A stretch of 64,000 nt of DNA. It comes from Glycera tridactyla (Eukaryota). Where the stretch lies: positions 30,504,001-30,568,000 of the forward strand of contig OZ286464.1 in the NCBI GenBank assembly GCA_965644265.1, read 5' to 3'. Shown piece by piece: positions 53,698-54,573 of this stretch. Within the stretch, counting starts at the first letter, position 1. Each line of letters begins with the position of its first letter. The notes below the pieces were generated by a model. It saw only the letters and a program-made list of their open reading frames with translations, did not search any database and was not told the origin of the DNA. Position numbers and translations under genes: made by a program.

Positions 53698-54573
53698 TGG
53701 CTGAGGATTCAGCCAGAAAGGAAAATGAGCACCACACAGCTCCTCGTAAACTTAAACGAGACATTCGCAGACACTGCCAAGTCCCGGTATCATTCACCAG
53801 ATAGCCATGGAATACCCATGTATAATGAGCACCACACGGCCCATGGTATACTCACACGAGACCGTCCCAGATACTACCATGTCTCGGCTTCACCATGTTA
53901 CAGTGTGATACTCATGCCAAAGTATGAAAAGTTTTGAGAAGAACTATCTTCTTATTATAATATCACCATGAATATCCCGGGTTTTAGTCAGATTAGGCCA
54001 CTGATTTCATCTTTCATTTCTACAAATTGTGTAGCATGCCTGCGTAATATCTATCCCAAAACTCATTCTTCTTCATATAATGGGATTTTTCGTTGAATCA
54101 TTTCTTGATTATCTACTAAATCTATCCGTCAGTCTGTCCAAACATAATTGTTTGAACTTCTCTAGTACGGATTTATCTAGGTCAGCATGAACTGTGCCGG
54201 TCTCGGCTATTACTACCAGATGGCGGGTCGGCAGTCGAGCCGCCTTCTTTACTATCACCACCTGGTGGAACCTTATCCCAGAATGTCAAGTTTTACCAAC
54301 TTTGAATAGATTTAAAGATTCTTCTGCCATGTTCACCTGACATGGCAGTATCTGGGAAGGTCTCATCTGACTATTCCAGATTTTTCCTTCGGCTTGAGAC
54401 TTTCACGACAGTATCAGTGAAGGTTTCACCGAAACTGTCGAGGCCTCAGCCAGGAAGGTAGGCTGGAATCAGCCAAATGAAAATAAGAACGAGCGTCACC
54501 ACACCTCGTCAATCTAAACGAAACGTTCACTGATACTGTCGTGTTTCGCTTCATTGAGAGCGTGTGATACTCG
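53698..54573 (-). ncRNA. Repeated structured RNA module in the retroelement 3' UTR (three 18-nt-loop hairpins plus two complementary partner sites)
   Basis: Hairpins at 53725-53820, 53825-53915 and 54490-54573 share one architecture with compensatory stems. Partner sites at 54339-54364 and 54404-54427. Function unknown. Confidence 0.6.

What the first reader, a model, noticed from the sequence alone, without database searches (positions are those of the whole stretch)
53725..54573. Hairpin loops that co-vary with their own distant partner sites in the 3' UTR of an env-bearing Gypsy element: candidate RNA docking/switch system
Seen: three hairpins, A (53725-53820), B (53825-53915, exactly 100 bp after A) and P (54490-54573), share basal GAG..CACAC/GTGTG..CTC stems, an apical CGARAC/GTYTCG stem and an exactly 18-nt loop (ATTCGCAGACACTGCCAA, CGTCCCAGATACTACCAT, GTTCACTGATACTGTCGT). 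Stem changes are compensatory (CGAGAC/GTCTCG vs CGAAAC/GTTTCG; CATGGT/ACCATG vs TCAAT/ATTGA). Several plus-strand A.C mismatches become G.U pairs on the minus (sense) RNA. Two inverted copies of the loop motif lie between B and P. Site 1 (54339-54364) is complementary to loop B at 24/26 and to loop A at 22/26. Site 2 (54404-54427) is complementary to loop P at 23/24. Non-cognate pairings are only 19/26 and 17/26, and at five diagnostic positions each loop matches its own partner. Both sites are themselves partly sequestered in local hairpins (CTGCCATGT/ACATGGCAG at 54324-54348; 54391-54451). Inference: mutually exclusive long-range pairings under selection. Possible roles are a kissing-loop dimerisation/packaging signal, a docking-site/selector switch as in Dscam1 splicing, or small-RNA plus target pairs. 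I know no described Gypsy element with this arrangement, but could not search.
Basis: partly seen in the sequence, partly recalled or inferred. Interest (0 to 1): 0.88.

Follow-up and report, generated by a model that had tools for sequence, protein, structure and literature searches.

The report
Hairpin repeat cluster downstream of retroelement env
Three related ~95-base RNA hairpins and two inverted part-copies of them lie in the long non-coding tail behind the envelope gene of a gypsy-type retroelement. The hairpins look like real sense-strand RNA structures, but the "loops co-varying with partner sites" pattern is explained at least as well by how the repeats were copied as by a docking switch.

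Summary
The sequence features are real. Hairpins A, B and P exist, with 18-nt loops and a 100-bp A-to-B spacing. The quoted 24/26, 22/26 and 23/24 complementarities are correct, and both sites sit in local hairpins.

First, the hairpins fold far better on the minus strand, with 19 G.U pairs there against 2 on the plus strand. This skew is local, and 6 stem pairs changed on both sides among the three copies. They therefore probably evolved as sense-strand RNA structures. Second, the "sites" are not loop-sized targets. They are 40-nt inverted part-copies of the unit, covering the upper 5' stem arm, the loop and 1-3 nt beyond.

All diagnostic positions fall on one split, {A,B,S1} against {P,S2}. 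That is one effective event, which copying history or gene conversion can explain. On the sense RNA, folding predicts B:S1 but not P:S2.

No other copy of the family could be found, so the covariation test could not be run. The region lies 3.0-3.8 kb past the env stop, and the 5' LTR is outside the window, so membership in the element is plausible but unproven.

Verdict: a probable structured RNA repeat of unknown role. The docking or selector reading is not supported.

The parts
53722..53822 (-). Hairpin A: 37 pairs on the minus-strand RNA, 10 of them G.U; loop at 53763-53780
   Evidence: -42.4 kcal/mol and z -5.5 on minus; -23.4 and a different fold on plus. Model R1 scores 86 bits.
53822..53918 (-). 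Hairpin B, tandem to A at 100-bp spacing; loop at 53863-53880
   Evidence: -39.7 kcal/mol on minus (6 G.U) against -23.9 on plus. R1 scores 102 bits.
54486..54580 (-). Hairpin P; loop at 54525-54542
   Evidence: -33.2 kcal/mol on minus against -24.8 on plus. R1 scores 72 bits.
54339..54378 (-). S1: inverted part-copy of the unit (upper 5' stem arm, loop and 3 nt), closest to B
   Evidence: 34/40 Watson-Crick with B plus 2 minus-strand wobble positions. Predicted to pair with B on both strands.
54404..54443 (-). S2: inverted part-copy of the unit, closest to P and 60 nt from it; 63 nt after S1 with the same copy bounds within 2 nt
   Evidence: 32/40 Watson-Crick with P plus 5 minus-strand wobble positions. 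P:S2 is predicted on the plus RNA only.
54324..54381 (.). Two local hairpins that cover S1
   Evidence: plus -30.0 kcal/mol (z -6.3); minus -24.2 (z -3.7).
54391..54451 (.). Local hairpin that covers S2 (arms 54406-54421 and 54425-54440)
   Evidence: minus -33.9 kcal/mol (z -6.4); plus -26.7 (z -3.4).
54056..54842 (.). Old direct repeat of about 657 bp (54056-54186 and 54713-54842, 65% identical). It places B and P at the heads of two long units.
   Evidence: (D3, D6).
55392..55516 (-). Hairpin Q (55392-55447) followed by a flank 70% like the one after P (55449-55516); its apical part is unrelated
   Evidence: -56.6 kcal/mol and z -5.0 on minus.
57569..60814 (-). env-like ORF of 1081 codons, unbroken, F-type
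   Evidence: Pfam Baculo_F, E 4.3e-9; 1360 relatives, the nearest 34-35% identical.
62869..64000 (-). Integrase end of pol, open to the edge of the window
   Evidence: rve, E 1.6e-8; open stretch of 376 codons reaching the window end.
52606..53590 (-). LTR-like stretch just downstream of hairpin A: purine tract 53574-53590, four TGACGT motifs in a 63-bp tandem (52970-53050), TATAAATA at 52761-52768, AATAAA at 52606-52611
   Evidence: This is inference from motifs only; no second copy is available for comparison.
57557..57570 (-). Alternative purine tract directly after the env stop
53680..53685 (-). AATAAA about 40 nt after hairpin A on the minus strand
   Evidence: A six-letter motif, weak on its own.

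Best explanation
The locus is a nest of copies of one hairpin-forming repeat of about 95-100 nt. Three full copies (A, B, P) and two inverted 40-nt part-copies (S1, S2) lie in the non-coding stretch behind the env gene of an F-type env-bearing Ty3/gypsy element.

Shown: the three full copies keep a long imperfect stem of 32-37 pairs specifically on the strand that is sense for env and pol. They tolerate transitions only where these give G.U on that strand.

Inferred: they act as structured modules of the element's sense transcript. The most likely role is a multi-copy cis-acting post-transcriptional element (RNA export, stability or packaging), as in the repeated structured elements that simple retroviruses carry between the last gene and the 3' LTR.

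Inferred: S1 and S2 arose as one inverted part-copy that was then duplicated in tandem. Each later came to resemble its nearest-type full copy through short-tract sequence exchange. The loop-to-site complementarity, and the B:S1 alternative duplex, would then be by-products of that history rather than an address code.
For: - Strand asymmetry of the folds.
- G.U counts of 19 on the minus strand against 2 on the plus strand, p = 2e-4, and p = 0.002 even under a 60:40 mutation bias.
- The skew is local: G+T on the minus strand is 0.61 in A+B but 0.48 in the next 400 nt.
- 90.7% of stem cells pair across three copies that are only 60-77% alike. Six pairs changed on both sides, and 4 of 500 shuffles reach this.
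- The 53.7-55.5 kb stretch is the structured part of the spacer.
- The sites cover the stem arm plus the loop, with the same bounds within 2 nt and 2-3 shared derived states.
- The tree ((B,S1),A,(P,S2)) needs 3 extra steps; the alternative needs 8.
- No coding signal is present in the spacer.
- CTE and the 115-nt direct repeats of RSV are precedents for repeated structured 3' elements (PMC3856414, PMC4330390).
Against: - Only one copy of the family is in hand, so nothing shows conservation beyond this locus.
- Arms of a palindromic DNA repeat can be homogenised without selection.
- Structure-dependent editing of a transcript (A to G, or C to U) could give the same G.U skew without any function.
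- Membership in the element is unproven. The region starts 3 kb after the env stop, further out than the 3-kb reach the survey PMC13524379 used when searching for LTRs past the env stop in most of its species groups.
- Wobble-type mismatches in the long-range arms are 7 on the minus strand against 0 on the plus strand. This hints that those duplexes too may be under constraint, which this account treats as secondary.
- No Rfam family matches.
Confidence: 0.42

Rival explanations
1. Neutral repeat debris. This would be a hypervariable, palindrome-prone non-coding stretch in which direct and inverted duplications and gene conversion piled up. The hairpins would have no role, and the G.U skew would come from strand-biased or structure-dependent mutation.
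For: - Nested direct and inverted copies, an old 657-bp tandem duplication and further unrelated hairpins.
- The mosaic pattern of splits is typical of sequence exchange.
- No relatives were found anywhere.
- Repeat arrays in the linker before the 3' LTR are known in other LTR elements (PMC2829016).
Against: - The skew is confined to the hairpins and absent next door.
- 19 against 2 is hard to obtain from a mild bias.
- Compensated pairs are present.
Confidence: 0.3
2. Loops B (and A) and P each pair with their own site (S1, S2) in the sense RNA. These pairings would be mutually exclusive, selected long-range interactions acting as a dimerisation, packaging or docking/selector switch.
For: - Cognate matches of 24/26 and 23/24 against 17-19 for non-cognate pairs.
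- B:S1 dominates the predicted ensemble on the sense RNA, with probability 0.96.
- S1 and S2 seem to share an origin yet each matches a different full copy.
- Mismatches in the 40-nt arms are wobble-type on the sense strand 7 to 0.
Against: - There is one effective split, so there are no independent co-changes.
- Complementarity extends into the stem arm, so this is strand invasion and not loop docking.
- P:S2 has probability 0.001 on the sense RNA.
- With G.U allowed the specificity shrinks to 29-31 against 26 of 36.
- There are no exons or splice choices to select.
- The location is 3', whereas known retroelement kissing signals lie in the 5' leader (PMC5454406, PMC6844567).
Confidence: 0.1
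3. Small-RNA precursors. The long imperfect hairpins (A and B in tandem, and P), or the S2:P and B:S1 inverted repeats, would be cut into miRNA-like or hairpin-derived siRNAs. These could serve the element or the host's silencing of it.
For: - Stems of 32-37 pairs rich in G.U, with tandem 100-nt spacing.
- 40-bp inverted arms with a 60-nt spacer.
- Weak likeness to generic miRNA precursor models.
Against: - The Rfam hits are far below threshold (23.8 bits against 113; 29.2 against 64) and are to plant families.
- No small-RNA data are available.
- Nothing singles out a mature arm.
Confidence: 0.1
4. The cluster does not belong to the env-bearing element at all. The element would end soon after the env stop, and the hairpins would lie in flanking DNA or in another, non-autonomous element whose LTR-like end is at 52.6-53.6 kb.
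For: - A purine tract sits directly after the env stop.
- The hairpins lie 3.0-3.8 kb further on.
- No LTR pair is in the window.
Against: - The hairpins are stable on the same strand as env and pol.
- No foreign coding remnant, terminal repeat or target duplication marks a junction between 53.6 and 57.5 kb.
- Purine tracts are common, 77 on that strand in the window.
Confidence: 0.25

Closest known systems
Constitutive transport element of type D retroviruses and the 115-nt direct repeats (DR) of Rous sarcoma virus (PMC3856414, PMC4330390)
   Same: Structured RNA modules of about 100 nt, in more than one copy or with internal two-fold symmetry. They lie in the non-coding stretch after the last gene and before the 3' LTR, and act in cis on the unspliced sense RNA.
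   Different: There is no sequence or covariance-model match. The host is an invertebrate-type Ty3/gypsy element. Inverted part-copies are present. The function is untested, and the position relative to the 3' LTR is not fixed.
Kissing-loop dimerisation signals of LTR retrotransposons and retroviruses (Ty1 PAL sequences: PMC5454406, PMC6844567; Ty3 RNA map: PMC11381356)
   Same: Hairpins in the genomic RNA whose loops are complementary to another site, and long-range pairings that compete with local folds.
   Different: Known signals are short loop-loop contacts in the 5' leader. Here the match is 40 nt, runs into the stem, lies in the 3' part, and the partner is not presented in a loop.
Docking-site and selector-sequence pairing in Dscam1 exon 6 splicing (from general knowledge, not tested here)
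   Same: Competing, mutually exclusive long-range RNA duplexes.
   Different: That system has one docking site and many selectors, each next to an alternative exon. Here there are three hairpins and two sites with pairwise matches, and no exons.
Repeated symmetric motif boxes and inverted repeats in the non-coding linker of env-bearing Sirevirus retrotransposons of plants (PMC2829016)
   Same: Clusters of a short symmetric motif in the non-coding parts of an env-bearing LTR element, close to the polypurine tract and 3' LTR.
   Different: Those are Ty1/copia elements of plants. Their boxes are short CpG-rich DNA motifs conserved across many families, not 95-nt strand-specific hairpins.
F-type env-carrying Ty3/gypsy elements of metazoans (PMC13524379)
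   Same: Integrase and a Baculo_F-type env on one strand.
   Different: That survey does not mention untranslated regions or RNA hairpins. This element has about 2 kb of spacer before env and about 4 kb after it. Its env is only 34-35% identical to the nearest protein in 1.84 billion representatives.

Membership tests
Env-bearing Ty3/gypsy element (errantivirus-like) | pol with a retroviral-type integrase on the same strand as env | tested here: met
   rve, E 1.6e-8, in 62869-63945 (-). The frame is open to the window edge.
Env-bearing Ty3/gypsy element (errantivirus-like) | F-type envelope gene downstream of pol | tested here: met
   Baculo_F, E 4.3e-9, above the curated cut-off; 1360 relatives.
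Env-bearing Ty3/gypsy element (errantivirus-like) | Pair of long terminal repeats, with the hairpin region lying inside them | not testable with these tools
   The 5' end lies beyond base 64000. No repeat of 50-64 kb occurs elsewhere in the window. Only motif-level hints of a 3' LTR at 52.6-53.6 kb.
Dscam-type docking site / selector system | One docking site complementary to many selector sequences, each beside an alternative exon | tested here: not met
   Two sites and three hairpins with pairwise matches. No ORFs or coding signal in the region.
Kissing-loop dimerisation signal | Complementarity confined to short loops presented on hairpins | tested here: not met
   The matches are 40 nt and include 14-16 nt of the stem arm. 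S1 and S2 are mostly inside local stems.
Kissing-loop dimerisation signal | RNA dimer formed through the site | not testable with these tools
   Needs RNA-level data.
Retroviral 3' post-transcriptional element (CTE / DR type) | Match to a curated RNA family model | tested here: not met
   only two sub-threshold hits, to plant miRNA models, in 52-58 kb.
Retroviral 3' post-transcriptional element (CTE / DR type) | Repeated structured module conserved on the sense strand between the last gene and the 3' LTR | tested here: inconclusive
   The structure and its strand are supported. The position relative to the LTR is not fixed.
miRNA / hairpin-RNA precursor | Hairpin reaching a family's gathering score, or small-RNA reads | tested here: not met
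   23.8 bits against 113, and 29.2 against 64. Reads are not available.
MITE or foldback DNA element | Terminal inverted repeats with a target-site duplication, and further copies in the genome | tested here: not met
   The inverted arms start inside a unit of the tandem array. No duplication is visible at their outer ends. No other copy occurs in 64 kb.
Repeat array in the non-coding linker of an LTR element | Several copies of one motif clustered between the last ORF and the LTR | tested here: met
   Five copies within 850 bp against 0.02 expected, subject to the open question of the boundary.

The most novel reading that the evidence does not exclude
The two pairings B(A):S1 and P:S2 are an address-coded set of competing long-range duplexes in the sense RNA of a metazoan env-bearing retroelement. 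They would be kept matched by co-evolution after S1 and S2 arose as tandem twins, and would switch the RNA between alternative fates, for example between different uses of the transcript.
Probability: 0.08. Interest if true: 0.8.

Novelty: new member of a known kind. Interest (0 to 1): 0.35.

Why it matters
If the hairpins are conserved in other copies, they would be the first cis-acting RNA structure described in the untranslated tail of a non-insect-type env-carrying gypsy element. The one recent survey I read (PMC13524379) does not mention untranslated regions or RNA hairpins. That would give a handle on how such elements manage the export, stability or packaging of their RNA.

The clean strand-specific wobble signature is also a useful example of how to tell an RNA-level palindrome from a DNA-level one using a single locus.

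As it stands, with one copy and no relatives, this is a well-documented curiosity rather than a system.

Tried and rejected
1. Finding same-family copies. All of the following failed:
- The env protein against 5.8 billion proteins gave no hit.
- A full HMMER scan of 1.84 billion representatives gave a nearest relative at 34-35% identity, unnamed in its sources.
- The 96-codon chance ORF over P, used as a proxy for DNA similarity, gave no hit.
- Integrase relatives reach at most 59% identity and are unnamed.
- A degenerate 24-letter pattern of the five motif copies scanned against metagenome contigs gave 39 single hits. This is about the chance number, and none has wider similarity.

2. A second LTR or other copies in the window: none.

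3. Rfam: nothing meaningful.

4. A covariance model of A, B and P over the whole window with filters off found only the three hairpins. The other weak hits are unrelated palindromes scoring on structure alone.

5. Coding remnants in the 4-kb spacer: none in Pfam.

6. Fixing the polypurine tract from purine runs: rejected, because there are 77 such tracts on that strand.

7. A MITE reading of the B and S1 arms: rejected, because the arm begins inside a tandem unit and there is no target duplication.

8. A regional mutation skew as the cause of the G.U excess: rejected, because the skew is absent in the neighbouring 400 nt.

Full report
**What is there**

- Two tandem units start at 53724 and 53824. 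They are 77% identical over 69 nt and exactly 100 bp apart.
- A third copy lies at 54497-54538.
- The three 18-nt loops sit at 53763-53780, 53863-53880 and 54525-54542.
- Two inverted matches lie between B and P. One is 53844-53883 with 54339-54378 (40 nt, 85%). The other is 54404-54443 with 54504-54543 (40 nt, 80%, only 60 nt apart).
- The 24-nt core shared by all five copies occurs five times in the 64-kb window against 0.02 expected, and nowhere else even with two mismatches.
- Both sites lie in strong local hairpins.

- (a) The sites are not loop-sized. Each is an inverted copy of the same 40-nt piece of the unit: the upper 14-16 nt of the 5' stem arm, the loop, and 1-3 nt beyond. The two have the same bounds within 2 nt.
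- (b) Hairpin A does not form the long hairpin on the plus strand at all.
- (c) B and P head two old direct repeats of about 657 bp. The stretches 54056-54186 and 54713-54842 are 65% identical.
- (d) A further strong hairpin, Q (55392-55447), is followed by a flank 70% like the one after P.
- (e) In a sliding fold scan, 53.7-55.5 kb is the structured part of an otherwise ordinary spacer.

**Strand**

On the minus strand the three hairpins fold at -42.4, -39.7 and -33.2 kcal/mol (z -5.5, -3.35, -3.3). On the plus strand they fold at -23.4, -23.9 and -24.8.

The minus-strand stems hold 10, 6 and 3 G.U pairs and no A.C mismatch. The plus-strand folds hold 0, 0 and 2 G.U pairs. A count of 19 against 2 gives p = 2e-4, and p = 0.002 even under a 60:40 bias.

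The skew is local. G+T on the minus strand is 0.61 in A+B but 0.48 in the next 400 nt, so a regional mutation asymmetry does not explain it.

Across the three copies, 90.7% of stem cells pair and six pairs changed on both sides. Four of 500 shuffles reach this, and slid controls give 1-2.

With only three paralogues this is moderate evidence, not proof. Even so, the simplest reading is that these stems have been kept as structures of a minus-strand RNA. The minus strand is the sense strand of the neighbouring env and integrase genes.

**Context**

- An unbroken ORF of 1081 codons at 57569-60814 (-) matches Pfam Baculo_F.
- The ORF at 62869-63945 (-) holds an integrase core, and its frame is open to the window edge.
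- Within the window I count no break in env and none in the integrase part of pol. The rest of pol and gag lie outside the window.
- About 2 kb without a long sense ORF separates the pol stop from env. About 4 kb without any Pfam signal follows env.
- The hairpins lie 2989-3844 nt after the env stop.
- No LTR pair is in the window.

Just downstream of hairpin A on the minus strand lies a stretch that looks like an LTR by motifs only. It has a purine tract (53574-53590), four TGACGT motifs in a 63-bp tandem, a TATA box (52761-52768) and AATAAA (52606-52611). Another purine tract directly follows the env stop, and such tracts are common: 77 on that strand.

So "3' UTR of the element" is plausible but not shown. 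The hairpins could equally lie in a very long U3, or outside the element.

**Is the loop-to-site covariation evidence of selection?**

Over the 40 shared columns the variable sites split as follows:
- {A,B,S1} against {P,S2}: 5 times
- {B,S1} against the rest: 3 times
- {S1,S2} against {A,B,P}: 2-3 times

They count as one event, not five.

The tree ((B,S1),A,(P,S2)) needs 3 extra steps, and the alternative needs 8. However, S1 and S2 share copy bounds, adjacency (63 nt) and some derived states. This suggests they began as twins and were later made to resemble B and P.

Short-tract gene conversion between inverted repeats gives exactly this pattern of a near-perfect core with older flanks. Selection for pairing gives the same pattern. 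One locus cannot separate the two.

- B:S1 dominates the predicted ensemble on the sense RNA, with probability 0.96.
- Wobble-type mismatches in the two 40-nt arm pairs are 7 on the sense strand against 0 on the other (two-sided binomial p about 0.016, worked out by hand).

Points against:
- P:S2 has probability 0.001 on the sense RNA, where P and S2 each keep their own hairpin. It forms only on the plus strand.
- Once G.U pairs are allowed, cognate pairings score 29-31 of 36 and non-cognate ones 26 of 36.
- The pairing needs invasion of a stem, so it is not a loop contact.

**Search for relatives**

- The env protein has no hit in the word-indexed search.
- In the exhaustive search its nearest relatives are 34-35% identical and unnamed.
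- The chance ORF over P has no homologue.
- Integrase relatives reach at most 59% identity and are unnamed.
- The metagenome scan gave only chance-level single hits.
- Rfam gives nothing.
- A covariance model of the three hairpins finds only them in the window.

I did not look up the genomic contigs that encode the nearest env relatives (P0001, P0151). The step is listed under referred steps. Those relatives belong to other families, so they could only have shown whether a similar architecture exists there.

**Comparison with what is known**

- The closest working analogues are the repeated structured elements that simple retroviruses carry between the last gene and the 3' LTR: the CTE and the 115-nt DR of RSV (PMC3856414, PMC4330390). 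Membership is not met, because there is no model match.
- Kissing-loop signals of Ty1 (PMC5454406, PMC6844567) and the Dscam docking/selector scheme differ in defining features, as set out in the membership table.
- Repeated symmetric motifs in the linker of env-bearing Sireviruses (PMC2829016) show that motif clusters near the 3' LTR are a known kind.
- The metazoan survey of env-carrying gypsy elements (PMC13524379) does not mention untranslated regions or RNA hairpins. For most of its species groups it searched for LTRs only within 3 kb of the env stop.

**Verdict**

The hairpins are probably genuine sense-strand RNA structures. The docking or switch interpretation is not supported, though it is not excluded (about 0.1). 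Function and membership in the element remain open.

- In my private reasoning I briefly recalled from memory a few letters of the ends of a known errantivirus LTR and of a known retroviral loop. I used them in no call and in no conclusion.
It is a search pattern, not a majority sequence, but I flag it in case it counts as a consensus. I do not repeat it here.
- The N stretches were left untouched.

Noticed in passing
window 60815-62868: About 2 kb between the pol stop and the env ORF has no long sense-strand ORF (longest open stretches 144 and 122 codons). On the opposite strand there is an S/P-rich ORF of 349 codons (61012-62061, +) with no Pfam match.
   Followed up: partly
window 29839-31913 (+): Two adjacent ORFs of a pogo/Tigger-type transposase: HTH_Tnp_Tc5 and CENP-B_N in one, DDE_1 in the other.
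   Followed up: partly
window 26242-26349 and 34028-34217: Clusters of palindromic repeats rich in CCGCGG lie on either side of the pogo-like transposase, with another long palindrome at 29384-29482. They scored weakly with the hairpin model on structure alone and are unrelated in sequence to hairpins A, B and P. They may be terminal sub-repeats of a DNA transposon.
   Followed up: no
window 52956-53076: A 63-bp tandem repeat (76% identical) carries four TGACGT (CRE-like) motifs on the minus strand, about 200-290 nt upstream of a TATAAATA. It looks like an enhancer-promoter arrangement.
   Followed up: partly
window 56730-56870 and 55392-55447: Two further strong minus-strand hairpins lie in the spacer after env (-50.4 and -56.6 kcal/mol). 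In their stems they are unrelated in sequence to A, B and P.
   Followed up: partly
window 56210-56330: A CT-rich simple-sequence stretch on the minus strand in the middle of the spacer after env. It might mark a junction between different sequences.
   Followed up: no
window 51791-52132 (+): An ORF of 113 codons that by eye resembles the tail of a non-LTR reverse transcriptase. Pfam gives no match, so this is unverified.
   Followed up: partly
window, 12 N runs (e.g. 45366-46351, 16585-17007): 3312 bases are masked or gaps. None lies in or near the finding. They were left as they are.
   Followed up: no
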